Below, piece after piece: positions 2,623-64,000 of a stretch of DNA of 64,000 nt (position 1 is the stretch's first letter; each line of letters begins with the position of its first letter). Position numbers and translations under genes: made by a program. This stretch comes from Octopus bimaculoides (lineage: Eukaryota). The stretch is from assembly GCF_001194135.2 (NCBI RefSeq), contig NC_068995.1, forward strand, positions 50,154,852 to 50,218,851, given 5' to 3'. The notes under the pieces were generated by a model. It did no database searches. It had not been told where the DNA came from and saw only the letters and a list, made by a program, of their open reading frames with translations.

Positions 2623-5398
2623 TCTCCTTGTCTTGACATCAAGTGATAGTTGGGAGTGTCACTCTCATACAAGCAGTCATTCTTTTTGAATATTCTGTGT
2701 GAACATATCTGGCTGTCAGGAAATATTACCTTATTTGGAAACAGGTGGGGGGGTGGCAACAGGAAAGGCATCCAGCTGTATATGCCTCATGTAAACTGTT
2801 CAATCCATGTGAGCATGGGAAACAATGATGATATTGATGATGATGATGAAATTACATCCATAATGAAAGGCCAAGTCACTGGTGATAATGATTGGTCTTG
2901 TCATGAAAGGCAAAGGAAAGAGCTCAGTGAAAATTAAATGGGGTTGTCTGGTCTTTGGTTTGGTAAGAATAAGGAAAACTCCAGACATGTTTTGGTGTTA
3001 TAAAACCTCCTCGGTGAGACACCTAAGACACATATAGACCCTGGTTGAGATCCACTACTCCAGATTCACTCAGATTGAGCAGACATATAAGTAAAAGCAT
3101 TCCAGCCACGATCATCCTGTATTTTAAGGGATTTTCTATGCCAACAATATCTAAAGATCCACATGGAAGAAATAAGAAAAAACACACGCAAACAAACGAA
3201 AAAGACCCATACATGCCATTCTAACTTCAGTTGACATCTGGAATGCTTTTGTTTCACTACACTAGTCACTAGTCATACACTCTTGTAATTGAGAGTGTGC
3301 AAGTTATTCTAGGAAAAGGACTTGAAAAAAAAATTACTAGATGAAGTACCTCACTTACCAAGTCCAGTATTACGCACAGAAATAAATGTGCCCTATTTAT
3401 TATTCAACCAGGATGTAAATCAATTACTAAATCAAGGATGTAATTTAGTAAGTACGAATGTTTAAAATTATCATCACCATCATCGTTTAACATCTGTTTT
3501 CCATCCTGGTATGGGATGGACGGTTTGACTGAGGTCTGGAGAGCCAGTGGCTGCACCAGGTTCTAATCTGATCTGGCAATTTTTCTACAGATGGATGCCC
3601 TTCCTAATGCCAACCACTCCGAGAGTGTAGTGGGTGCTTTTATGTGCCACTGGCACAGGAGCCAGTCAGGTGGCCCTGGCATTGATCACGTTTGGATAGT
3701 GATTTTTACGTGCCACCAGCACAGGGGCCAGTCAGGGAGTACTGGCATTGATCATGTTCAGATGGTGCTTTTTATGTGCTACTGGCATGGGAGTCAGCCA
3801 GAGGGTACTGGCATTGGCCATGGCTAGACACTCGCCCATGGTGCCACGCAGTGGGACTGAACCCGGAACTATGTGGTTCATAAACAAGCTACTTACGACA
3901 CAGCCACTCATACACACACTCGTGTTCATAGAACATGATCAACGTTTTATTTTACTGAACCCTCATTTGTTGTTCACAACAAGAGAATCCATTTTCGAGA
4001 CCTTGACTACTGACCGAGACCTTTGGAAATGTGCTGTGCGTGAGAAGACCCGGCAAGCCAAGTAAGATCGTTGCCAGTGCCCCTGGACTGGCTCTTGTGC
4101 GGGTGGCACATGAGATGCACCATTTTGAGCGTGGCCGTTGCCAGTACCGCCTGACTGGCTCCCGTAGGATTTTCGAGTGAGATCGTTGCCAGTGCCCCTG
4201 GACTGGCTTGTGCGGGTGGCACATAAAAGACACCATTTCGAGCGTGGCCGTTTTCGTGCAGGTGACACGTAAAACCACCCACTACACTCTCTGAGTGGTT
4301 GGTGTTAGGAAGGGCATCCAGCTGTAGAAACTCTGNNNNNNNNNNNNNNNNNNNNNNNNNNNNNNNNNNNNNNNNNNNNNNNNNNNNNNNNNNNNNNNNN
4401 NNNNNNNNNNNNNNNNNNNNNNNNNNNNNNNNNNNNNNNNNNNNNNNNNNNNNNNNNNNNNNNNNNNNNNNNNNNNNNNNNNNNNNNNNNNNNNNNNNNN
4501 NNNNNNNNNNNNNNNNNNNNNNNNNNNNNNNNNNNNNNNNNNNNNNNNNNNNNNNNNNNNNNNNNNNNNNNNNNNNNNGTGTGTGTGTGTATGTATATAT
4601 ATATATATATATCATCATCATCATCATCATCGTTTAACGTCCACGTTCCATGCTAGCATGGGTTGGACGATTTGACTGAGGACTGGTGAAACCGGATGGC
4701 AACACCAGGCTCCAATCTAATTTGGCAGAGTTTCTACAGCTGGATGCCCTTCCTAACGCCAACCACTCAGAGAGTGTAGTGGGTGCTTTTACGTGTCACC
4801 CGCACGAAAACGGCCACGCTCGAAATGGTGTCTTTTATGTGCCACCCGCACAAGAGCCAGTCCAGGGGCACTGGCAACGATCTCACTCGAAAATCCTACG
4901 GGAGCCAGTCAGGCGGTACTGGCAATGGCCACGCTCAAAATGGTGCATCTCATGTTGTTCACAACAAGAGAATCCATTTTCGAGACCTTGACTACTGACC
5001 GATAAGAAGTCAGAATAAAAATATGTAATTAATCAGAAAAGCAGGAAACTCAGGAAAGTGATTCATAGTAATTCTTCACAGATAAGAACTGAGCACCAAA
5101 CACCAGCCCCAGAAACAGCTGTAAAGGATTACCCCTATTCATTGTTCTCTCATTTGTGAGGTTCAAGTATGAACTCTATGAACTCAATGAAGAATGGCTT
5201 TGCAGGACTAGTCAGCCCAAGGCTATTATAGAAGATACAGATATTTGCTCAAAACGCCATATAGTTGCTTCTGCTAAATATTAATAATAATATACAAATA
5301 CTCATATTTTGAGCTCTGTTTTTTCTGTTTGCACCACCATATCTATATATACAAATAAATATAAATTCCTTTATGACTATGTATGCATGCCAACTTAC

Positions 5399-13125: not shown

Positions 13126-14669
13126 CTGAAATAAGTATAAAATTTCACAGCAAAAGGAAAAAAATCCGAACATTTTTATAATTTGAACATCAATTTATGT
13201 CAATAATGCTGCACTGGTATGAGTATTAAAATCTTTTTGAAAACTAATGTTATCTGTCACTTGTACCAACAGTGGTTCATCGCAAACTTCACACAACTGC
13301 CATATACACTGTCAGTGGCACATTTTCATAATTTGAGAAAATGTTTCATTCTGCATATTTGACATGGTTTTGAGGATATTTAAATAATGCAAGTGCTAAT
13401 ATGAAAGACTGATTATGAAATATTGTAAAAATGCAAAAAAATTACATTCCTTTGTAATTAATCTGTATGCATTGTGACTGGAAATACATGGCCTCACCAG
13501 TGAGTTCCAGTAACAGGCTGAGGCAGTTAACATGTTAAAATGTGAGGTAAAGATAGTTTGCCAACATAACATGGCAGTCCTGGTTTAGGACGAATGTCAT
13601 TAGTTTCACCATGTTATGTTGGCAAACAATCTTTAATACAAAGTACTGTTGCTGAATATCTCTTGTTGTGAGATTTTAAAATAGTAATTTTTTAATTTAA
13701 AATGTGCTTAGCTAACGAATATCTGAAAAAATTCAGAACTTTATCAAGCCTATCAAAAGGCCTTTGACCTCAACATGGCCTTTGGCCCTGCAAAATATTG
13801 TCGGATGAATGCCACTGGCATTTATTTTATTGCCCTATCACCCAGCCATAGAAGAAAAACAAAGCAGATTTCTGAAGAGATTGATAAAAGAATTCTTTTC
13901 TAGGCATCATCATATCTGCAGTAGAAAATATTTACGAGTTAAAAAATCAATAAGGCTGAAAGGTGGCACAATCTGGAATCAAACTTAGTCATTGAGAACA
14001 ATGTCATTATCTTCCAGGACAAATCTATTCATATAGATAAAGTGATAAAAATTAACAAGCCTGAGATCATTTTTAAGAGGCACATATCTATCTGTGTGGC
14101 CATATTGTCTGAAAGAAATACCTCCATGAAAGTACAAATATGTGAAGAGTGAAATCGAAAGGATTGGGAGTGTAGCAACCAAAACAGGCCATGTCAGATA
14201 CTTCTAAAGAACTCATATCACCATTCTTCTTTTGTGTGTCACTTGAAAAAAACTTTTGAAATTAAGGTATTACATGGATTTAAGTCATTGAAAAGAAAAC
14301 TGTTGCCAGAGTTCTGAGTAAATAAGTTCTGCCGACACAATCTTGAATAGGGTGTGAGAAACATGTCTTGACGAGATTAGGAAAGAATGTGTCAACAAAA
14401 AATAAAAGAATGACAAAACTCAGAGTTAATCCGTCCACTAAAAATAGAGTATTTAGTTGTGAATGCCAATAGAAGGGGAGTTACATGTAAACTAAGTTCA
14501 TAACTCACTTCTCAGGCTTTTTTCGATGAACTCATTCCAATTGATAAAAAGTTGATGAGGGACCAACTTTAGGGTAGCTTTGAATTCTAGAAATATCAAC
14601 CAAACTCACTTCATGTAACACTGAGGAGAAGGACATAAAGGAAGAAGACAGGACACCAACAGACTAGAG

Positions 14670-15719: not shown

Positions 15720-16214
15720 TATATGCATGTATATGTATACACAAACACACACATCGTCATCATCATCGTTTAATGTCCGTTGTCCATGCTGGCATGGTTT
15801 CTATGGCTGCATGCCCTTCCTAACGCCAGCCACTTTACAAAGTGTGCTGGGTATTTTCATGTGGCACCACATGGGCACTTTTACATGGCACTGCCACAAG
15901 TGCTTTCACCACCAGAGGGACTGGTCTTGACACTTCTGCTGTGGAGTACGGGTCTTCTTGAGTACAGCAAGGTGCCAAACATCTCGGTCCTTTGTCATCT
16001 CGCCTACCTGACCACAGCTGTCTTAACCCACCGAGTCACTGTGGTCAGACCTCCAAGCCTAAAGTGTGGGGTCAGATTGCATGGCTCTCACTTTAAAACT
16101 AAGCACAGGCAGGGAGAAAACCCATGCAGTGATGGAGAAGCATTGAAAGTGACAGGTACTGGATGGTACTGGCAGTCACAGGCTCAACTCTACATGTAGG
16201 CAGTCTCTGTCTTC

Positions 16215-30476: not shown

Positions 30477-31448
30477 GTGCATGTGTATTTAACATACATA
30501 TGTATATACATACACTTTATGGTATTCCATAATAATAGTAATGTAAACATATGTGCGTGCGTGCATGTATGTACGTACGTAAGTACATAAATATGTACAA
30601 ACGGATGTACCCACCTATGTATGTAAGCACATACGTAAAGCAAATATACGTGTGTGTGCGTATGTATGTGTGTATGTATGTATGTGTGTATGTATGTATG
30701 TACATACATGTATGCATGCACACATATTTACTTTATTCTCATTATAGAATTGTAGGGCAAAAGTGAAAGTGTTTTTTTCCTCGGCATATAAAAAATAAAA
30801 AAACAAAACGATTTTTCTAGCCAAAAGTGAAAGTATTTTTCTTAGAAAATAAAGGAAAAATGTTTTTGTGTTTTCCTGAGCAAAAAGTAAAAACTGCATT
30901 TATTGTTTTTTTTTCAATAAAAAGGTTAAATAGATCCAATATCATAAAGTAATTGTTCACATCATGTATCTTTTAGCTTTTACTTGTTTCAATCATTAGA
31001 CTGTGGCCATGCTGGGGCACTGACTTGAAGGACTTTTCGTAGAACGAATCAACCCCAGGACTTAATTTTGTTAAGCCTCATACTTATTCTGTCATCCCTT
31101 TTGTTGAACCACTAAGTTGTGGGACATAAACACACCAGTCAGGCGGTACTGGCAACGGCCACGCTCAAAATGGTGTATTTTACGTGCCACCCGCACAAGA
31201 GCCAGTCCAGCGGCTGGGAGATTTGGCTACTATTTCTAGCAGGTCATATAATTTACTTCACTCCAACTATTGAGGATCCCTCATTGGTTTGTGAAAGAAT
31301 GTACAGCATTACATGTCACTGTACCATATCTTGTAACAGTAAAGAGGAGGAAAAGAAGCAAGGCAAAAGCTAACCAACAAAAAACAAAAAAAAATAGCAG
31401 TAATGTAAAAGAAATTAACAAAAAAAGCAACAAAAATAGAATACCTAC

Positions 31449-31840
31449 TTTTCATAAGGTTCTGGTGGTGGATATAGCTGGACTGTACATTTTAGCTGAC
31501 CACAGGTCAAAGTCATAACATAGGGAGAGAAGATGTCATCGGCAAATCTCTGGAACATCTGCTGGACAGATTTTGTAGAAAGGGCAGCATCAGGGGTATA
31601 AATGTCTCCGCCATATCCATTAATGTCAATTAACTTTTGAAAGAGCGGCAGAGAAACCCGGAGGTTAGGATCTGAGGGGGGCGCAATGCACATCACATAG
31701 AGTTTGCATCTTGTGTTGAAAGGTAACGGGAAATTTCCTTTCTCACTGTTGTTCTTTGATTCTCTTTTGTGATACTTTTGTAATGAATAGGACAAAGAAC
31801 CAGGACCAATGCCAGAACAACCATCGGTGATTAACAGAAC
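31449..31840 (-). CDS. INTS14: INTS14 coding exon 3
   Basis: ttttgcag|VLLITDGCSGIGPGSL...FPLPFNTRCKLYVMCIA...LTCGQLKCTVQLYPPPEPYE(K)|gtaggt; 392 nt, phase 0/2. Confidence 0.95.
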
Positions 31841-32025
31841 CTGCAAAACAAATTCAGAAGGAGGGTGAAAATGTTACAGAGGTAAAGGAATTTGTGTTTA
31901 TACAGATATATATGTGTGTGTGTATATATATATATTCTCTCTTTCCTTTCCTGAGCGTCCAATAATACTATCCATATCACGTCCTCACTTTGTTGTTTTT
32001 TTGTTTTTTTGTTATTGTTTTTTTG

Positions 32026-32092
<67 letters not shown>

Positions 32093-33008
32093 GCATGATT
32101 TTTGGGCCCCACGGAGGCAATGACTAGTGACCGAGACCTTTGGCATTGTGCTCTGCTTGAGAGAACCGATCAAGCCAAGTGAAATCGTAGTCATGGCTGA
32201 TGCTGGTCGCACATAAAAAGCACCTTTCGAGTGTTAAGCCTCATGGAGACAAAGTGGCTAAGCTCCTTTCAAATGTCTGGCCTCATGGAGGCAATGACCA
32301 AAACCATTGGCATTATGTCGTGCTTGAAAAGAAGACCCATCAAGCCGGGCAAAATTGCAGTCATGGCAGATACAAGTGTCAAGTAAATGGCACCTGTGGC
32401 TGTGGCATGTAAAAGCACCCATTACACTCTTGGAGTGGTTGGCATTAGGAAGGGCATCCAGCCATAGAAACCTTGCCAAATCAGACTGGAATCTGGTGCA
32501 GCCTTCCAGCGTGCCAGCCCTGGTCAAACTGTCGAACCCATGCCAGCATGGACAGCATCCATCTACCAAATCCACTCTCAAGGCTTTGTTCGGCTCGAGG
32601 CTACAGTAGAAGACACTTGCGCAAGGTGCCATGCAGTGGCTCTGAACCCAGAACCATGTGGTTGGCAAGCAAGCTACTTTGTGCCTATATATTTATTAGA
32701 AAGGGCATCCAGCTGTAGAAACCATGCCAAATCAAACAAGAGTCTGGTGCAGCCCCACCTCCCAGCTTGCCAGTTCTGGTCACATTGTCCAACCCATGCC
32801 AGCATGGACAACAGATGTTAAATGATGACAATGATGTTGATGATGATGATGAAATACATAATACATGTATAACCTATATATAATATATAAAAGAGACATT
32901 CTGTCTGTGTGTTTGTTTGTTTGTCCTCCAAAATGAAAGTAAGTGGCTTAAGGGAAACTATTATGCTTTTTGTTATCTTATCTTATCTTATATCTTATAT
33001 ATATATAC

Positions 33009-34441
33009 ATGAACCGCAAAAGAAACACAAGCCGTGTGTGACTATGAGATATGTTTTAATTCCATTATGTCAGAGATAAAGTTTGATAAACCTGATAAAG
33101 TTCATTTCTTTGAAACACTTTGACCACAGTCTATGGGTCATTATCATGTGTTTTGAGAGTGGGCGGATCCAGCACATTGAGATTGTAGGGTGCGACATGT
33201 TCAATACCGTGTATGCCCCTCCTTGGGTGTTCAAAACGACCATACACCGTTGGTACATGGAGTGCATGAGGCAGTTCACAAAAGCCAGTGGCACTTATGA
33301 TCACAGCCTAAGAAAAGCTGCCTCCATGTCCACACAAGTTGTTGGCCTTGGGACCACCTGGTTCTGATGTTGTGCTGATGCAAGAAGTCCATGGTGACCC
33401 TGGCTGGTGGGAGGGAGCATTGTCCTGCTGGAAAATGTGGCTATGGTGATGCACGAAGAAGGGCATGATGTAAGGTCTTAAGATCTGGTCAATGTGCTGG
33501 GCTGTGATGCCATTCCCTCTGCCTGCACATTTTGGAACATATGGGGCCTAATTCTCTGATTCAGGCCTACAGCACCTCAAACCATGCTACTTTGGCCACC
33601 CCATGCGTCTCTCTCCATGACATGTGTCTGTAGTGCTCACCTCTCCTACGCCACACCCTCACTCTGCCATCCAAGGTGGAAACGCAGTACTGACTCTCAT
33701 CAGGGAAGACTATCAACCTCCATTGTTGGTGCTGTGTAACCCACTGTAGTCATGCCTGACAGCGGTGGGCAGTGAGGACAGGATGTTGAGCAGGACGGCA
33801 GCAACGCAGGTTGTTGGCGGTCAGTCGACGTCGTACTGTGTCGTTGCTGATGGGTCACTGTCCAGTGCCAATGGTCTCACAAGCTGTCATGCTGACCGGT
33901 CTGAAGCGATCATGGAGGTGTTGCAAGTGAATGGAGTGATCCTGCCTGGGTGTGGTCACCCAGGGGCCCCTCTGAAGGCATGGTCTGCAGTGCTGTTGTT
34001 GTTGTAGCACTGTTGTAAGTGATAGATGGTGCTGACATGGACAGTGAAAGCTTTCGCATCAATCAGGGCACACAGCCCTATTTGCAATCGGCCAATAGCT
34101 TGTTCCCTCTATGCTGCTGACAATCAGGTCATACCAGATGCGTCCAAATTACAAATGCCAGGAACATGGTTCAAGTTGATTTTTATACCCATAACCTCCA
34201 CAAGATGCATGTGCATTTTGGTTTTCGTGACAATTGTTTGCAACTGCCACCCATGCCATTCAACACAGCTGCATTTTGACATCTTGTTTCAGGGAAAGTT
34301 GAAAGGTTACCTGCAATTTGGGTCTCTGCAATAAACCAGCATGTCTTGGAATATTTACACTTACATCCCCAAAATAAATTTTCAGAATTTACCATATAAG
34401 AATGACATTTGAAAAAATCATGTTTCTTTTGTGGTTCAGTG
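33009..34441 (-). mobile_element. Decayed Tc1-like transposon
   Basis: TIRs catgaaccgcaaaagaaaca / tgtttcttttgtggttcagtg, both next to TA. Minus-strand remnants include EQAIGRLQ.G, DES.YCVSTLDGRVRVWRRRGEHY, HIFQQDNAPSH and SMYQRC..V....GG. Confidence 0.85.
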
Positions 34442-34446
34442 TATAT

Positions 34447-34700
34447 GAGAGATTCTGTCCATCTGTGTGTTAGTTCATTTGTTTGTCCACCAAAATGAAA
34501 GTAAATGGTTCAAGGGAAGCTACTATGCTTTTTTTTTTATCTCCCGTTATGCTATTACCTAAGATGTCTAGAAAAAAATGGTACAACACTAATTGTACAC
34601 AAACCTATGAGGAACTGCATTGAGGCAAATATTCTCACTGGTTGTGGCAAAGGTGACACCGTCTTCGTTCCTTGCATACCAGTTATACCAGTTTCTGGAG
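34447..34700 (+). mobile_element. Helitron fragment (PIF1-like helicase remnant)
   Basis: NGTTLIVHKPMRNCIEANILTGCGKGDTVFVPCIPVIP resembles Helitron helicase LCNGTRLIV...VIEATILTG..KGE.VFIPRIP.IP; a related 5'-end copy lies at ~32872-32975. Confidence 0.7.
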
Positions 34701-35499
34701 AGATTACATATTTTCTTTGGTGGCATTTTTTTTCCAACATTGTAAACAAAAAATTATGAACAAAGAATAATACAATAATAGAGAAAGGGAGGGAGATATA
34801 TACAGAGAGACAGACACATATATATACACATACACAATATATATTCAATTAGTTTTACCCAGAAGATAGTTGAAACACTACATCATAACCTTCATAATTT
34901 TCTCTTTCTCTATTTTCCATTAGGTTAAGTTGGAGTTGGATCAGAGGATGGCCAAGAATTTAGAGAACAACCTAACAAATAAATCGAAAATGACTTCGAC
35001 CACACAGTCTCAGCTGTGAATCAGTTTTACACGGTCAAGATGAAGGGGGACAACTCCCGTCATCAGAGTGTCAGTGCGAAAACAAGAATTACACAAACGT
35101 GTATGTGTTGGCTATGGGCGGTGATGTTGCTGTAATTTCTCCTATCAATGGGTCAACGATGAATGGAAAAAAGAAATAGTAATAGGAAGTGTGTCCAAGA
35201 GTCTGGTGCAGCCCCACAGCTTAATAGCCCTGGTCAAACCTCTTCTAATGCTAGCATGGAAAATCTTATGTAAAAGGGAATGAAAAAGCTGTCATCATCA
35301 ATATCTGTACATAAATTTTTCTACTGTGGCATGGATCTGATGATTAGTGCAGTAATGAGGTTGTGTGATGGTTACACTTGAAGAAACCCATGGAACCTTA
35401 GTTAAGATTTTTAGTTAAATACACTAAAACAGACATTTAACATGCAGTTAGTATTAAATGTTTAATTAATATGATAAGAGTCTATTTAGGATAACTCAC

Positions 35500-35670
35500 C
35501 TGAGATGTGGCAAAGATACTCCACTCTTCAGTTATGATTGAATTCACTCCACTCAATGCTGTTTCAATGCAGGTTTTACTATATTCATCCACTTTGTTTA
35601 GAACCATTCTTATTTGTTCAACATCACGAGTAAATGGCACCAGTTGTTCCCATAAATAAGAAAACACTAC
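35500..35670 (-). CDS. INTS14: INTS14 coding exon 2
   Basis: ctcag|VVFSYLWEQLVPFTRDVEQIRMVLNKVDEYSKTCIETALSGVNSIITEEWSIFATSQ|gtgagt; 171 nt, phase 0/0. Confidence 0.95.
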
Positions 35671-36818
35671 CTGAGTGCAAAAAGAAATAAAAAAGATATA
35701 TTTCTGGGTAAAAAGAAGTTGCCTTAACTCATCCACAGGGGGCAGCCTGGTATGGTAGGGAATTTTATAGAGAGATAGTGTAGTGTCCCCTTTAATACGA
35801 TGCTTGTGTGTGTGTTTGTGTGTCTGTGTTTGTCCCCCCAACATCGCTTGACAAACAATGCTAGTGTGTTTACGTCCCTGTAACTTAGTGGTTCAGCAAA
35901 AAAGAGATAGAATAAGTATTAAGCTTACAAAGAATAAGTCCTGGGGTCAATTTGCTTGACTAAATGGTTATGAAGGTGACTAGGTATATATCCATAGAGA
36001 GTCAGATAGTGTTGATGTCTTCATGGCACTACAAGATATGGTAGGGAGTTTTTAAACAGTATATTATCTTTTCTCTACAATGCCTGGTTCATTGAGAAGG
36101 GCTCTTTCTGAGGTGTAATAGTAAATGAACAGCTGATAATCCTAGGTGCTGTCTGCCAAATTTAAAGGGCATATCCTCTCTGCTAGTTCAGCCTTTGTTG
36201 TAGGTACAATAGCATATGAGCTTAAGACTGTCACTGGCTGTGCGTCTGTTGTCAAAATGGGCAAAGTAAACTAGTCAGCTGGCAATAGGGGAGTAGCAGA
36301 GTTGACAACCATGCATTGCTATCTCCTGCCACATAGGGTGGCATAGAGTGAGAAAGAGGAATTGATAGAAGATATAGTAATGGAAGAGGGTTAGAGTGAT
36401 TGGAATGAGACAGTGACAAAAGAGAGAGAGAGATAGTGTGATAGACTGCTATATTTGATGGTTGTTAGTAAGAAACTTGAATAGAAGCAGACTAAGCAAG
36501 GGAGACCTAAAAGTAACTATTAAACATCCGAGCCAATCTTCCTGGGTGTTTCCAGCAATTGTGTTTGACACAGGCTGTTTTCCCAGTCTTCTGTGGAAAA
36601 AATATTTGGTGATGGGGGAAATATTGCTTTGCTTGGAAACAGGTGAGGGTTGTGAAAGGAAGGACAGCCAACCATACAAAAATCATCTGCCTCAATTTTT
36701 GCCTGTTCCATAGAAGCATGGAGAAATAGATAATAGATGATGATGATGTTGAGACATACACACACACTTACACACACATCAGAAAAATAAAAGCTATTGA
36801 AACGTAGAAGGATCTTAC

Positions 36819-55577: not shown

Positions 55578-55873
55578 ATGGAAAAAATCAAAGCCTGTTC
55601 CAGTAACATCACTGTCATCCCAACCAACTATTCTCAAAAGAAAACCTATAAATATCAGCAGATTAGATCTGAATCCACAAAACTTTGCTGGGCAGCAAAA
55701 TCCTGTCTATACAGTGCCAACTGTAATACAAACAGTTCCAAGCAGAAATCCAATTTCATATGAGAGGCAATCAAACAGGCCCCCTAACAAAGTTTGGCCA
55801 CCTCTTGGTCAGTTTTTAACGATGAATGATTCAGTTATGTGGTATCCAGTTGAGAATGCTACTGTTGTCCCTG
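55578..55873 (+). CDS. Unknown membrane protein, cytoplasmic exon
   Basis: acaacag|a WKKSKPVPVTSLSSQPTILKRKP...NPVYTVP...ISYERQSNRPPNKVWPPLG...MWYPVENATVVP g|gtaagt; 98 stop-free codons in AT-rich DNA, phase 2/1, matching the previous donor. Confidence 0.75.
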
Positions 55874-56932
55874 GTAAGTAAGATAACGTAATTTTGATTG
55901 ATTGGTTCAATCGTATTTCCTGTGATTACTCAGTCATTACATAGTTGAGATAAAATAGTTTCTTTGGTTCCTTAGTTTGGTTTAACCATTATGACTAAAG
56001 CTGTACTGAAATGTTGATGGAGCGGAGAATATTTGGGGTGTATTTTTGTTATTTGTAAGCTAGTTAGAAGGGGAGGGAGCAGGCAGTACTCATGGCTATT
56101 GCAGGACTTCCCGGCCTGGTGAGATTGATGCATTCAATGTTTGGCATCAACATTTTGTAGGTCAATGTTTGCAAGAAGAGCATGTGTGAAGAAGGAATTC
56201 CAAGTGATTGCCATCCTGGGGAAGGAAGAGAGAATTTGGCGAAGTGTTTGGTGAGGCTTCTTAAAAGTTAAAAGTTAGACACAATGGTGGAGAGAGGAAC
56301 ATAAATAGTTGAGTTGGGTGAGCTTGCATGGCAAGGGTGTGTGTGTGTGGTAAGGGTGAGCTTGTATGGCAATGGTATGCAGTTACCTAACTTACAAGTG
56401 TGATGATGGGACCACCATTGCCACATGTGTGAAGTAGATTGCAAAATACAGTAATATAAGACAGTCTCCATTGGTCAAAAGCTAATCATGTATCTGGACG
56501 TGTATACCCAAGTCTAGCAAGACTTTTATATGCTTTGAGTTCTACAGTTTTGAATTAATATATAAATGTGTGTGTGTGTGAGTGTATGTACATATGTGTG
56601 TGTGTGTATATATATATATTTCGAAACGTCTAGTTAGAATAGAGACAGCTAATGAAGGGATATTCCAAGTGGCTTTCCGTTTTCCATGTGTTCGTTCCGT
56701 TGTCTGTAGTTCATTGTTCTAACGTCCTGTGCCCTGATATGCATATATATACACATGTAGATGTATGTACATATGTGTGTATACATGTATATATACATGT
56801 ATATATATTCTTTGTATATATATATATGCACACACACATACACACATTCTAAAAGTGGTGTTAACAACCTGGTTAATTATAATTTGCTGTTTCTTTGTAT
56901 TATGTTTATTTTTTATTTTATTTTTTTTCCAG

Positions 56933-56948
56933 CCAGACAACAAGCTCA
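56933..56948 (+). CDS. 16-nt micro-exon
   Basis: Long poly-T tract ...ttttttttccag|CCAGACAACAAGCTCA|gtaagt; phase 1/2. Confidence 0.65.
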
Positions 56949-57295
56949 GTAAGTAATATCTTCATATATTTGTCTGTCATTTATTCTATAGCTTTTTTGT
57001 CTGCAACTGTTGTTAGAAGGTGTGTAGTATGTGATGAAATTTATTATCTATTTTTTTTTTCTCATTTTTGTTAATAAATTGGACAATGGAGTACAAATGT
57101 GTATTGATGGCCTTTCCTGTTCCTTAAAGACTAGTGAGATGGATATGGCCTGGGCATCTGTGGATAAATGTTTGCAAGATGGATGCAAGTAAGGAGGGAT
57201 CTGGGGATCTACTAGTCAGGTTTTACTCACACAGTGTCAACATGAAGACATGTTGCAACACCCACACACACATACACACTCACGTCTGTGTGTGA

Positions 57296-57330
<35 letters not shown>

Positions 57331-57823
57331 NNNNNNNNNNTGGGCTAGATGGTTTAACCGGGCTGGCATGCTGGAAGGCTGCGCCAGGCTCCAGTCTAGT
57401 TTGGCATGGTTTTCTACAGCTGGATGCCCTTTCTAATGTCGACCACTCTGAGAGTGTAATAGACACTTTTACATTCCACCAGCATGGGTGCCAATTTGCG
57501 TGACACCAGTGCTAAAATTTGAAACCAATATTATATATCTTGTAAGTGGGGAGCTGGCAAAATGGCTAGTACGTTGGGTAAGTGGTATTTCGTCCAACTT
57601 TATGTTCTGAGTTTATATTCTGCCAAAGTAGACTTTGCCCTTCATCCTTTTCAGGATCAATAAATGAATACCAGCTGAATACTTAGGTTGATGTGAATGA
57701 CTTATCCCCTCCCTTGGCATTGCTGGCCTTGTGCCAAAATTTGAAATTAATGTTACATATTTTGACTTTCATTAAAACAATTACTAAACAGTTTTTTTCT
57801 TTTTTTCTTTTTAACTCTTTCAG

Positions 57824-57830
57824 GAACTCA
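57824..57830 (+). CDS. 7-nt micro-exon
   Basis: actaaac branch-like motif, then gtttttttctttttttctttttaactctttcag|GAACTCA|gtgagt; phase 2/0. Confidence 0.65.
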
Positions 57831-58018
57831 GTGAGTACAATTTTATATTTTTCTCATAATTCATAACTTTATAAAATGTGTTACTATATAAAAATAGATT
57901 AAAACAAAAACAAACATTGAATAATTCTTTTATTGGAGATAGCACTCACTAATATAACAACAAACCAACAAAGTAGATTGTTGATTTTAACATAATTTAT
58001 TTCATATCTCTTTTTCAG

Positions 58019-58099
58019 AAAGAAAGACCTGAATATTTGAAGAGACAGAGAGACCCAGGCTTTGGATCAGTAGAAATTTTACCTGATTATGATGATGAT
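58019..58099 (+). CDS. Unknown membrane protein, 81-nt exon
   Basis: tctctttttcag|KERPEYLKRQRDPGFGSVEILPDYDDD|gtatgt; only phase 0 is open, the other two frames hit TGA. Confidence 0.7.
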
Positions 58100-58956
58100 G
58101 TATGTTATTGATATGATATGAATTGGTGTTAGATTTTAAGGAATAGCAGAGAGGAACAACAAGATGGGGGTGGAATGAAGAGAAAGAAATTTTTAAGGAG
58201 TTCACATGAATAATGTGAGAAAAAGATGCATATATATATATGTGTGTGTGTGTGTGTCTGTATACATGTATGTATGTATGTCTGTCTGTATGTATCTCTC
58301 TCTCTCTCTTTATATAAATACACACACACATGCATTTACACACATACACACGCATGCACATGAACACTCATGCACAAATGCACTCACGCACACACACGCA
58401 TGCACACACACACGTGTGCGCATACGCACACATGCCAGGATTCTTTCAGTTTCAGTCTTTTGAACCCATTTACAAGGCTTTGGTTGATCCAAGGCTGTTG
58501 TAGAAGACACTTGGCCCATGTGCCATTCGGTGGGACTGAACCTGAAAGCATGAGGTCTGGAAAGCAAACCCTTTTAACTGCACAGCCATGCATGTGTGTG
58601 TGTGTGTATCATCATCATAACATACATATAACATAAAGTAATATATATCTATAATATAACAAGGATACAGCAATGAGTTCTTAAAATTATTACTGCACCA
58701 GACAAAATGCTTAGCACCATTTCTACTGACTCTTTATGTTTCTGAGTTCAAATGCTGCTGAGGTTAGCTTTGATTTTTGTCCTTTTGGGGGGTCGACTAA
58801 ATAACAGTGTAATCGACACCGTCCACCTCCCAAAATCGTTGTCCTTGTGCTATAATTAGAAAGAATACACTTGTCTGGTTAAAGATAATTCTGCTATCAC
58901 TTTTTATTTTTACAAGAATATTTAAGGATATATATATATACACATATATATATATA

Positions 58957-62477: not shown

Positions 62478-62551
62478 GTAATTTTATTGGTAAAAATGTG
62501 AAGAACATTAGAGCACATTTCCTTGGCAAATTTCAGATTATCGTTTTTCAG

Positions 62552-62643
62552 CCTTCAACCATATTCCATTCTCTGCAAAAAGAAATATTTGCCCTCCTAT
62601 CTTAAGAGGAACCTAGAAAGAGAATTACCAGGAAATAAAGTCA
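62552..62643 (+). CDS. Candidate 92-nt exon
   Basis: cgtttttcag|c LQPYSILCKKKYLPSYLKRNLERELPGNKV a|gtaagc; only phase 2 is open; an in-frame alternative acceptor exists at 62537. Confidence 0.55.
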
Positions 62644-62736
62644 GTAAGCATTGAGATATTTCAATTGCTGATGAATGATGAAGTGTAACAATCAATATCA
62701 TGCGACTAATTAATGATACCTTTTAAAAAATTTCAG

Positions 62737-62749
62737 ATTCAGTCAAAAG
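62737..62749 (+). CDS. Candidate 13-nt micro-exon
   Basis: gactaat branch-like motif ~26 nt upstream, tttcag|ATTCAGTCAAAAG|gtaaaa. Confidence 0.45.
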
Positions 62750-62882
62750 GTAAAATCTTCTAATTTTTATAACAGTTACAAAAACTCATTTATAAGTGAA
62801 GAATTCTTACCTTGTCCAATGAAAATTTAGATTTCAAATAGTCAAAGTCATCACACAACACTTAAAATTCACTTTACTTCAG

Positions 62883-62925
62883 AAGATGCATTAACACTTC
62901 AAATGTCGATTTCCTATATCCCCAG
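62883..62925 (+). CDS. Candidate 43-nt exon
   Basis: actttacttcag|...ccccag|gtgagt (tandem CAGAAG acceptor). Open in phase 2 (RCINTSNVDFLYPQ) and phase 1 (DALTLQMSISYIP); phase 0 is closed. Confidence 0.5.
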
Positions 62926-64000
62926 GTGAGTTCCAAATTCATTTCTAACTATACTAGTGGGGCTGAGGGTACAGTAATAAACTATGCATTCAGCCAGCCA
63001 ACATGCAATCCAGTTTCAATTCCCAGTTGTATCGTCTAGACTTACCTCATTAATTGCATTGGAAAAAAATGTTATGATTCTGCTGAAAGGAACGAAGATC
63101 ACGTCTTTCCTAAGATTATCTGAGGTGTCCAGAATTCCCAGTGGAATAATGTGTTACATTTTATTTCGTTTGTGATTTTGCATTAAGGTAACAGTAATAA
63201 ATGTTTCATGAAAGAGATTCTATTAAATAGGAGATTATTAAAAACAATAATATTCTTCTACATATTTATCTCAGCTGAAGTTTAAAATAAATAAACTTAA
63301 AATGCAGATGTAGACTTCCAACAATTAACAAATGTAATTTGAAGTTGAATGGTTTGTAGTAAGAAAGACGTCCAGATTTCTTACAAAATTAGTGTGCAAA
63401 ATATTCTGAGAAAAAGTATTTTTTTCACTACAACATCACACACACATACACACATATATACACACAGGTGTATCTGTAGTAACCTGAGCTACTACAGATA
63501 GCAGCCAAACCTCTCTTAAAACACAGCCTTTCGTCAAAAGAAAGACACAGATTTACAGTATTTCAAGAAGAAGAAAAAAAGCAAAACTATGCAATGACTC
63601 TACTACATCAGAGGCAAATCTGGGCTAAACAAAACACAAATATACTTCACATTAGATTATCTACTAAATAATACTAATAAAGTTGACGGTATATCTTCAA
63701 AGTTTCATTCCCTCATAAAACTCCATGTATTCTAAACATTTTCTCATTATGTTCTATGTAAGACGTAAAGATAAGGGAAGCAGAGTTGCAGAAAACATAC
63801 TTTATTCGGTTGCTGAAAGATTATGGAAACATTTTGATACCTCACACGTCAAAATCGACAACCAGGTTTTCAAATCCATAAGGAACATATGTGCGCACAC
63901 ACACATACACACACGCACAAACTCTGTTTTATATATTAAGATTTCATATTCATATTATCTTACCTCGGTTTCCGGAGATTTCACAAATTTATATTTTCTG

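What the first reader, a model, noticed from the sequence alone, without database searches (positions are those of the whole stretch)
56933..57830. Two apparently obligatory non-3n micro-exons (16 nt and 7 nt) that hold the reading frame
The exon ending at 55873 ends in phase 1, and the exon at 58019 is open only in phase 0. Between them are two tiny segments, each with a long polypyrimidine tract and a consensus donor: ccag|CCAGACAACAAGCTCA|gtaagt and ttcag|GAACTCA|gtgagt. Together they give 16+7=23 nt, exactly the shift needed (...TVVP-ARQQAQNS-KERPEY...). Skipping either or both, or using the competing AG 4 nt downstream (56937, 12 nt), gives a premature stop. Both end in CTCA|GT. Regulated animal micro-exons are usually multiples of 3, so a frame-coupled pair would be either constitutive or an on/off NMD switch. 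Splice sites and phase arithmetic are seen in the sequence; actual usage is inferred.
Basis: partly seen in the sequence, partly recalled or inferred. Interest (0 to 1): 0.8.

Follow-up and report, generated by a model that had tools for sequence, protein, structure and literature searches.

The report
Two tiny coding exons, octopus gene
Two very small exons (16 and 7 bases) in an uncharacterised octopus membrane-protein gene are real, already sit in older public gene models, and are needed to read the conserved tail of the protein; the newest RefSeq models drop one or both, probably because a 7-base exon is hard to align.

Summary
Exon A (55578-55873) ends in phase 1, exon B (58019-) is open only in phase 0, and the 16-nt (56933-56948) and 7-nt (57824-57830) segments together restore the frame. 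The window is Octopus bimaculoides and the gene is LOC106870792, a 169-aa orphan protein with an N-terminal transmembrane helix.

The predicted peptide ...TVVPARQQAQNSKERPEY... is 100% identical to UniProt A0A0L8HHQ4 / RefSeq XP_014772478.1. The O. sinensis and O. vulgaris models use the orthologous 16+7-nt exons. So the pair is already annotated.

The pair is more than chance. It accounts for 2 of only 4 strict polypyrimidine-YAG-N(1-30)-GTRAGT sites in 128 kb. Exon B substitutions fall at third codon positions of frame 0. A distant homologue keeps the C-terminal motif.

"Obligatory" and "NMD switch" are not established. Current RefSeq isoforms X1 (143 aa, no 7-nt exon) and X2 (135 aa, neither exon) exist. 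These could be minor isoforms or aligner losses. Their stop codons lie in what is probably the last coding exon.

The N gap is intronic. No RNA reads could be searched.

The parts
54284..54381 (+). Coding exon 1 of LOC106870792: start codon plus transmembrane helix (MTLGIVAALTAASTIAAINFVFVIAIIVWRCK-R). Donor is AACG|gtaaat.
   Evidence: tblastn of P0001 matches at 100%. An in-frame TAG lies 15 nt upstream of the ATG. The block is 96.7% identical to O. vulgaris.
55578..55873 (+). Exon A (296 nt), cytoplasmic tail with the QNPVYTVP motif. It ends in phase 1 (CCT G|gtaagt).
   Evidence: The O. vulgaris orthologue has the same length and the same donor.
56933..56948 (+). Micro-exon m1, 16 nt, CCAGACAACAAGCTCA, encoding (A)RQQA + CA. 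A competing AG 4 nt downstream (exon start 56937) would give 12 nt and a frameshift.
   Evidence: Orthologues are CCAGACAACAAATTCA in O. vulgaris (L001:12489-12504) and O. sinensis (L005:12071-12086), with ccag|...|gtaagt kept. It is present in RefSeq isoform X1 and in the 169-aa models.
57331..57340 (.). Assembly gap (10 N), intronic, at the junction of a (TA)n microsatellite and a SINE-like repeat.
57824..57830 (+). Micro-exon m2, 7 nt, GAACTCA, completing Q and encoding N, S. The acceptor has a 20-nt polypyrimidine tract, with an ACTAAAC branch-point-like motif about 40 nt upstream. Donor is gtgagt.
   Evidence: Orthologues are CAATTCG (O. vulgaris L001:14184-14190) and CAACTCG (O. sinensis L005:14225-14231). 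All three substitutions fall at third codon positions, and cag|...|gtgagt is kept. It is absent from current RefSeq isoforms X1 and X2.
58019..58111 (+). Exon B: KERPEYLKRQRDPGFGSVEILPDYDDD, then VCY* if the gtatgt at 58100 is not spliced. It is open only in phase 0. An alternative AG gives exon start 58023, an in-frame bypass found in O. bimaculoides only. The stops of the skipping isoforms are at 58030-58032 (X2) and 58038-58040 (X1).

Best explanation
The two segments are real internal coding exons of Octopus bimaculoides LOC106870792. This gene encodes a small (169 aa), octopod-restricted, uncharacterised protein with an N-terminal transmembrane helix and a cytoplasmic tail.

The productive mRNA is E1 (54284-54381), exon A (55578-55873), m1 (16 nt), m2 (7 nt), then exon B (58019-58111). 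Together the micro-exons supply 23 nt, which is 3n+2. This carries the phase-1 end of exon A into frame 0 of exon B, the frame that encodes the conserved C-terminal motif RQRxPxxGSxxxLP.

Each micro-exon is probably recognised because it has an unusually strong 3' splice site (long U-rich tract plus CAG) and a perfect intronic donor half (GTAAGT, GTGAGT). This part is inferred. They behave as ordinary, probably constitutive or majority-included, exons that happen to be tiny.

The truncated RefSeq isoforms X1 and X2 are most likely minor skipping products, or the result of RNA-seq aligners failing on a 7-nt exon and sometimes on a 16-nt exon.

Shown here: the anatomy, the phase arithmetic, conservation of length and signals in three Octopus species, presence in public gene models, and the coding signature of exon B in frame 0. 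Inferred: actual inclusion levels and the mode of recognition.
For: - Phase arithmetic and all skip products were verified.
- There is a 100% match over 100% of the predicted peptide to A0A0L8HHQ4 / XP_014772478.1.
- O. sinensis XP_029646630.1/XP_036365729.1 (169 aa) and the O. vulgaris model read ...VVPARQQIHNSNERPEY....
- The orthologous DNA keeps 16 nt and 7 nt with the AG and GTAAGT/GTGAGT signals.
- m1 and m2 are 2 of only 4 strict micro-exon-like sites in 128 kb. They are the only plus-strand ones in the O. vulgaris (34 kb) and O. sinensis (22 kb) loci.
- Their acceptors rank 2nd and 3rd of 120 AGs in the intron.
- Between O. bimaculoides and O. vulgaris, 5 of 6 substitutions in exon B and 3 of 3 in m2 fall at third codon positions of the proposed frame.
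- A distant homologue assembled from RNA-seq (P0003, 167 aa) aligns through the C-terminus, W.P.EN...RQR.P..GS...LP.
Against: - No RNA reads or transcripts of Octopus spanning the junctions could be examined. The only direct transcript found is from a distant homologue of unknown species.
- Current RefSeq has four transcripts for the locus and none contains m2.
- The O. vulgaris annotation used O. bimaculoides UniProt proteins as evidence. Gnomon also uses cross-species proteins (my own knowledge). The models are therefore not fully independent.
- Introns are about 90-93% identical between the Octopus species, so conservation of the tiny exons is weakly discriminating.
- Overall CDS divergence (6.4%, 13 synonymous versus 16 non-synonymous codon changes) shows weak constraint.
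- The Argonauta hians homologue shows no comparable micro-exons.
Confidence: 0.7

Rival explanations
1. The pair is a regulated switch. Skipping m2 alone or both micro-exons is frequent in some tissues. It yields C-terminally truncated proteins of 143 aa (...ARQQAQKKDLNI*) and 135 aa (...VVPERKT*) that lack the conserved acidic tail. In transcripts spliced at 58099 it could instead yield NMD substrates.
For: RefSeq isoforms X1 (XP_052829278-80) and X2 (XP_052829281) are exactly the A+m1+B and A+B products computed. The exonic halves of both micro-exon donors are weak (CA|GT; PWM 4.8 and 5.5 versus 10.8 for exon A). The A. hians homologue is annotated with the analogous direct join, ERDC*.
Against: The truncated tails are not conserved: O. 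vulgaris would read E* where O. bimaculoides reads ERKT*. A 7-nt exon is below the reliable range of STAR, so X1 may be an artefact. There is no UGC enhancer-type motif near either 3' splice site. No expression data are available.
Confidence: 0.2
2. The micro-exons are annotation artefacts. Gene builders or protein projection picked two chance AG...GT snippets to rescue an ORF. The real product ends soon after exon A, and exon B is 3' UTR.
For: The relaxed scan finds other frame-restoring combinations. The models are partly interdependent. The newest RefSeq build lacks m2.
Against: Sites of this strength occur about once per 60-100 kb outside this intron. Length and signals are kept in three species, while the 7-nt exon itself changed at 3 silent-type positions. 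Exon B shows a third-position substitution bias in frame 0. The C-terminal motif is shared with a distant homologue's transcript.
Confidence: 0.07
3. The frame is kept without micro-exons by an alternative acceptor. Exon A would join to 58023 (aag|AAAGACC), giving ...TVVP-ERPEYLKRQRD....
For: The join is in frame and stop-free in O. bimaculoides.
Against: It needs an AAG acceptor 4 nt downstream of a strong CAG. The required AG is absent in O. vulgaris and O. sinensis. No public model uses it.
Confidence: 0.03

Closest known systems
Constitutive coding micro-exons (30-51 nt or shorter) in animal and plant genes, e.g. those surveyed by MicroExonator in mouse (PMC7821500) and in rice (PMC6600660)
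   Same: These are tiny internal coding exons with strong canonical splice signals. They are needed for the ORF and are often missed by aligners and annotators. [quoted passage not shown]
   Different: Here two such exons are adjacent, both are non-3n (16 and 7 nt), and one is at the extreme short end. The host gene is a lineage-restricted orphan.
Neuronal SRRM4/eMIC-dependent micro-exon programme of bilaterians (Irimia et al. 2014, from my own knowledge; Torres-Mendez et al. 2022, PMC8797185, listed)
   Same: The size class is the same, and the micro-exons lie in a coding region of a membrane-protein tail.
   Different: Exons of that programme are mostly multiples of 3 and alternatively included, and they carry UGC motifs just upstream of the 3' splice site. 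These two are non-3n, and neither has a UGC within 40 nt of its acceptor. Tissue specificity is unknown.
Frame-shifting cassette exons that switch C-termini or trigger AS-NMD ('poison'/essential exons)
   Same: Skipping either exon shifts the frame and creates an early stop. Such isoforms are listed in RefSeq.
   Different: The early stops lie in the exon that holds the normal stop, so classical EJC-dependent NMD is not predicted. There is no unusual conservation of the flanks.
Schistosome micro-exon genes (MEGs; from my own knowledge)
   Same: They contain consecutive very short exons in genes for small lineage-specific proteins.
   Different: MEG micro-exons are symmetric (3n), so they can be skipped freely to create variants. 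Here the pair is frame-coupled, and there are only two micro-exons.

Membership tests
Constitutive coding micro-exon | Canonical AG...GT borders with strong signals | tested here: met
   Pyrimidine content at -20..-3 is 89% for both. Acceptors are CAG and donors are GTAAGT / GTGAGT. The acceptors rank 2nd and 3rd in the intron.
Constitutive coding micro-exon | Needed to join the flanking exons in an open frame that is itself under coding constraint | tested here: met
   Phase arithmetic was verified. Exon B has 5 of 6 substitutions at third codon positions. The C-terminal motif is shared with P0003.
Constitutive coding micro-exon | Length and splice sites conserved in orthologues | tested here: met
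   O. vulgaris and O. sinensis keep 16 nt and 7 nt with the signals. This is not seen in the distant Argonauta hians homologue.
Constitutive coding micro-exon | Included in essentially all transcripts | not testable with these tools
   No RNA-seq access. Public models disagree: 169-aa models versus RefSeq X1 and X2.
SRRM4/eMIC neuronal micro-exon | Length a multiple of 3 (frame-preserving when skipped) | tested here: not met
   The lengths are 16 and 7 nt, and skipping gives stops.
SRRM4/eMIC neuronal micro-exon | UGC motif close upstream of the 3' splice site | tested here: not met
   The nearest TGC is 45 nt upstream of m1. There is none within 60 nt of m2.
SRRM4/eMIC neuronal micro-exon | Neuron-specific inclusion | not testable with these tools
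   No expression data.
AS-NMD switch exon | Skipping or inclusion creates a premature stop | tested here: met
AS-NMD switch exon | The premature stop lies more than about 50 nt upstream of a downstream exon junction | tested here: inconclusive
   In the 169-aa models, exon B carries the normal stop (VCY*, identical in 3 species), so there is no downstream junction. Only the O. vulgaris model splices at the equivalent of 58099, to a terminal exon with no O. bimaculoides counterpart.

The most novel reading that the evidence does not exclude
The 16-nt and 7-nt exons could form a combinatorial, frame-coupled switch. Both in gives a 169-aa protein with the conserved RQRxPxxGSxxxLP/acidic tail. m2 out gives a 143-aa protein. 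Both out gives a 135-aa protein. The switch would be used in a tissue- or stage-specific way to turn the C-terminal interaction motif of an octopod-specific membrane protein on and off. That would be an uncommon use of non-3n micro-exons as a protein-tail toggle rather than as 3n insertions.
Probability: 0.15. Interest if true: 0.45.

Novelty: already known. Interest (0 to 1): 0.25.

Why it matters
Biologically this is modest. It is an ordinary, if extreme, case of tiny coding exons in an orphan octopus gene.

Its practical value is as an annotation check. The older models encode the conserved 169-aa protein: A0A0L8HHQ4, XP_014772478.1 and the O. sinensis XP_029646630.1. The current O. bimaculoides RefSeq isoforms X1 and X2 lack the 7-nt exon and encode truncated tails. 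This is a concrete example of how exons shorter than 10 nt can be lost in modern short-read pipelines.

If the skipping isoforms proved real and regulated, the locus would be a neat example of frame-coupled micro-exons toggling a C-terminal motif.

Tried and rejected
1. Closing the gap from the chromosome-level O. bimaculoides assembly failed, because it has the same N run.
2. Spliced transcripts were sought without success.
- The exact-protein look-up of P0001 found no contig.
- The cluster holds no transcript-derived member.
- A degenerate junction pattern found nothing in metagenome contigs.
3. Deeper relatives were sought to test conservation.
- An exhaustive phmmer search gave only 4 hits.
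- Word-indexed searches with P0003 and with the family alignment added nothing.
4. The Argonauta hians homologue (L003) has no recognisable orthologues of m1 or m2 by BLAST or by signal scan. Orthology versus paralogy is unclear because the neighbouring genes differ.
5. Pfam gives only sub-threshold hits driven by the transmembrane helix (Cadherin_C_2, Syndecan). These were rejected.
6. The idea that the micro-exons derive from the local SINE or another repeat was rejected. Both contexts are unique in the window.
7. The shared CTCA|GT ending is not a meaningful motif, because it is not conserved.
8. The Albertin 2015 genome paper could not be read.

Full report
**What is in the sequence**

- Exon A (55578-55873) is open in one frame and ends ...ACT GTT GTC CCT G|gtaagt, which is phase 1.
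- Exon B starts at 58019 after tttttcag and is open only in phase 0: AAA GAA AGA CCT GAA TAT... = KERPEY....
- Between them lie ttttccag|CCAGACAACAAGCTCA|gtaagt (56933-56948, 16 nt) and ctttcag|GAACTCA|gtgagt (57824-57830, 7 nt).

I spliced every combination in a script.
- A+m1+m2+B is open and reads ...TVVPARQQAQNSKERPEYLKRQRDPGFGSVEILPDYDDD.
- A+B gives ...VVPERKT*.
- A+m1+B gives ...ARQQAQKKDLNI*.
- A+m2+B and the 12-nt m1 variant from the AG at 56935-56936 also run into stops.

**The assembly gap**

The 10 N at 57331-57340 sit inside the intron between m1 and m2. Frame continuity across them is therefore not at issue. The only risk is a hidden exon.
- The flanks are colinear with gap-free Octopus vulgaris DNA in a single BLAST HSP (window 57213-57946 to L001:13544-14312).
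- In the alignment the gap corresponds to about 43 nt at the junction of a (TA)n microsatellite and the 5' end of a SINE-like repeat.
- O. sinensis has a longer (TA)n and an insert of about 430 nt at the same spot.
- Neither relative has any strong exon-like site there.
- The chromosome-level O. bimaculoides assembly (CM046615.1, locus L002) is base-for-base identical to the window and carries the same N run.

**Which gene it is**

A protein search with the predicted peptide returned UniProt A0A0L8HHQ4_OCTBM (169 aa) at 100% identity over 100% of the query. It also returned an O. vulgaris protein reading ...VVPARQQIHNSNERPEY....

The 90% cluster of the first protein holds these members:
- RefSeq XP_014772478.1, O. 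bimaculoides LOC106870792, 169 aa, same sequence as A0A0L8HHQ4.
- O. sinensis XP_029646630.1 / XP_036365729.1, 169 aa, both micro-exons used.
- The current O. bimaculoides isoform X1, XP_052829278-80, 143 aa, ending ...ARQQAQKKDLNI.
- The current O. bimaculoides isoform X2, XP_052829281, 135 aa, ending ...VVPERKT.

X1 and X2 are exactly my A+m1+B and A+B products. So the micro-exon pair has been in public gene models since the first octopus annotation. The newest RefSeq build has lost the 7-nt exon in all four transcripts and the 16-nt exon in one of them.

The gene has a first coding exon at 54284-54381. Its ATG is preceded by an in-frame TAG, and the exon encodes a transmembrane helix followed by RCKRWKK. 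The rest of the protein is a low-complexity tail containing QNPVYTVP. Pfam finds nothing significant. An exhaustive phmmer search of 1.8 billion representatives found only two more relatives: a 167-aa protein from an RNA-seq assembly (Logan, SRR24189498, species unknown) and a 138-aa Argonauta hians protein. It is an orphan, cephalopod-restricted small membrane protein.

**Is the pair more than chance?**

A strict pattern scan required at least 80% pyrimidines at -20..-3, YAG, 1-30 nt, then GTRAGT.
- It gives four hits in the entire window on both strands, and two of them are m1 and m2.
- A slightly looser version finds only the orthologous m1 and m2 on the plus strand of the 34-kb O. vulgaris locus and the 22-kb O. 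sinensis locus. It finds nothing in the 26-kb A. hians locus.
- With a background of roughly one site per 60-100 kb, the chance of two sites in one 2.1-kb intron, on the right strand and with the right summed phase, is of order 1e-4.
- Both contexts are unique in the window and are not repeat-derived.

There is a caveat. With a crude PWM and low thresholds, 7 single and 17 paired alternative segments also restore the frame. The arithmetic on its own would not have been decisive.

**Conservation**

O. vulgaris and O. sinensis keep m1 as ccag|CCAGACAACAAATTCA|gtaagt. This is 16 nt with GCT changed to ATT (Ala to Ile). They keep m2 as cag|CAATTCG|gtgagt and cag|CAACTCG|gtgagt, both 7 nt.

All three m2 substitutions fall at third codon positions of the proposed frame, and two of them are synonymous. 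In exon B, 5 of 6 substitutions are at third positions of frame 0, and 4 of those are synonymous. For that frame the probability is about 0.02.

The distant homologue P0003, a spliced transcript, aligns through the C-terminus: W.P.EN ... RQR.P..GS...LP. The alignment has E = 6e-9 for the whole protein and E = 1e-3 for the last 55 residues alone. Exon B is therefore translated in frame 0, which requires 3n+2 nt between exons A and B.

Two limits apply. The Octopus introns are themselves 90-93% identical, so nucleotide conservation of the tiny exons says little. The gene as a whole is weakly constrained, with 13 synonymous versus 16 non-synonymous codon differences. The shared CTCA|GT ending is not conserved (TTCA, TTCG) and is a coincidence.

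**Obligatory? An NMD switch?**

1. RefSeq X1 and X2 show that models without m2, or without both, exist. They may be real minor isoforms. [quoted passage not shown] To my knowledge NCBI's current pipeline aligns RNA-seq with STAR. Loss of the 7-nt exon in every current transcript is what such an artefact would look like.

2. In O. bimaculoides only, joining 55873 to an AAG acceptor 4 nt inside exon B (exon start 58023) is in frame and gives ...TVVP-ERPEYLK.... The AG needed is absent in the two sister species, and no model uses it.

3. The 169-aa models end with VCY*, read through the gtatgt at 58100. GTATGTTATTGA is identical in all three species. The extra terminal exon used by the O. vulgaris annotation has no counterpart in O. 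bimaculoides. Exon B is therefore probably the last coding exon. The stops produced by skipping (58030-58032 and 58038-58040) would then give truncated proteins rather than classical EJC-dependent NMD.

**Independence of the gene models**

The O. vulgaris annotation combined Iso-Seq/PASA, STAR, ab initio predictors and Spaln alignments of O. bimaculoides UniProt proteins (PMC10700109). I could not read the 2015 genome paper. No Octopus transcript spanning the junctions is reachable with these tools. Actual usage remains inferred.

**Outgroup**

The A. hians homologue also ends its second exon in phase 1 (GCA G|gtaagc). It is annotated with a direct join giving ERDC*. No micro-exon candidates or sequence similarity to m1 or m2 are found in its intron. 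A GAG acceptor 2 nt downstream would open a long ORF. Its neighbouring genes differ from those in Octopus, so it may be a paralogue. The age of the micro-exon pair is unknown.

**Comparison with known kinds**

The pair behaves like constitutive coding micro-exons that rely on strong splice signals. It does not fit the neuronal SRRM4/eMIC programme, because the lengths are non-3n and there is no UGC near the acceptors. It only half fits an AS-NMD switch, because a premature stop is created but in the last coding exon. It also differs from schistosome micro-exon genes, whose micro-exons are symmetric.

**Verdict**

The 'obligatory / NMD switch' reading is only partly supported. Interest is low to moderate. 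The main value is flagging that the current RefSeq isoforms probably miss a 7-nt exon.

Noticed in passing
window 58019-58026: Exon B begins AAAG AAAG. The second AG gives an in-frame bypass, 55873->58023, that would delete ARQQAQNSK. It exists only in O. bimaculoides, not in O. vulgaris or O. sinensis.
   Followed up: partly
window 31445-35844, minus strand: Exons of an Integrator complex subunit 14 (INTS14) gene. Pfam gives IntS14_b-barrel at E = 6e-6 and VWA_2.
   Followed up: partly
window about 62540-64000, minus strand: The 3' part of a cytochrome P450 gene (516-aa product, PF00067), annotated on the identical chromosome-level record. The same neighbour is present in O. vulgaris.
   Followed up: no
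window 14610-14620 and 41928-41937, minus strand: These are the only other strict micro-exon-like sites in the window (11 nt and 10 nt). The one at 41928 resembles the SINE segment ...catcctttcag|..caataaa seen at 57640-57670, so it is probably repeat-derived. The one at 14610 is unexplained.
   Followed up: partly
window 57341-57740, and many other places (e.g. 4580-4640, 15780-15900, 45720-45830): There are copies of a SINE-like repeat that translates as ...LQLDALPNANHSE.... Several N gaps in the window abut such copies or microsatellites.
   Followed up: no
L001:10572-11265 versus window 56316-56379: A unit of about 36 nt that is nearly single-copy in the O. bimaculoides intron is expanded into a tandem array of about 700 nt in O. 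vulgaris.
   Followed up: no
L003:12194 and 16008-16110 (Argonauta hians): The homologue is annotated with a direct, early-terminating join (ERDC*). A GAG acceptor 2 nt downstream would instead open a 34-codon ORF, ARLLIIKRDEDYYF....
   Followed up: partly
L001:24203-24292 (O. vulgaris): The O. vulgaris model splices the equivalent of 58099 to a terminal exon 8 kb downstream that has no counterpart in O. bimaculoides. It also starts at an internal Met of exon A, so it looks like a partial transcript-derived model.
   Followed up: partly
L005:13150-13690 (O. sinensis): O. sinensis has an insert of about 430 nt plus an expanded (TA)n exactly where O. bimaculoides has its assembly gap. The site is an indel hotspot.
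   Followed up: no
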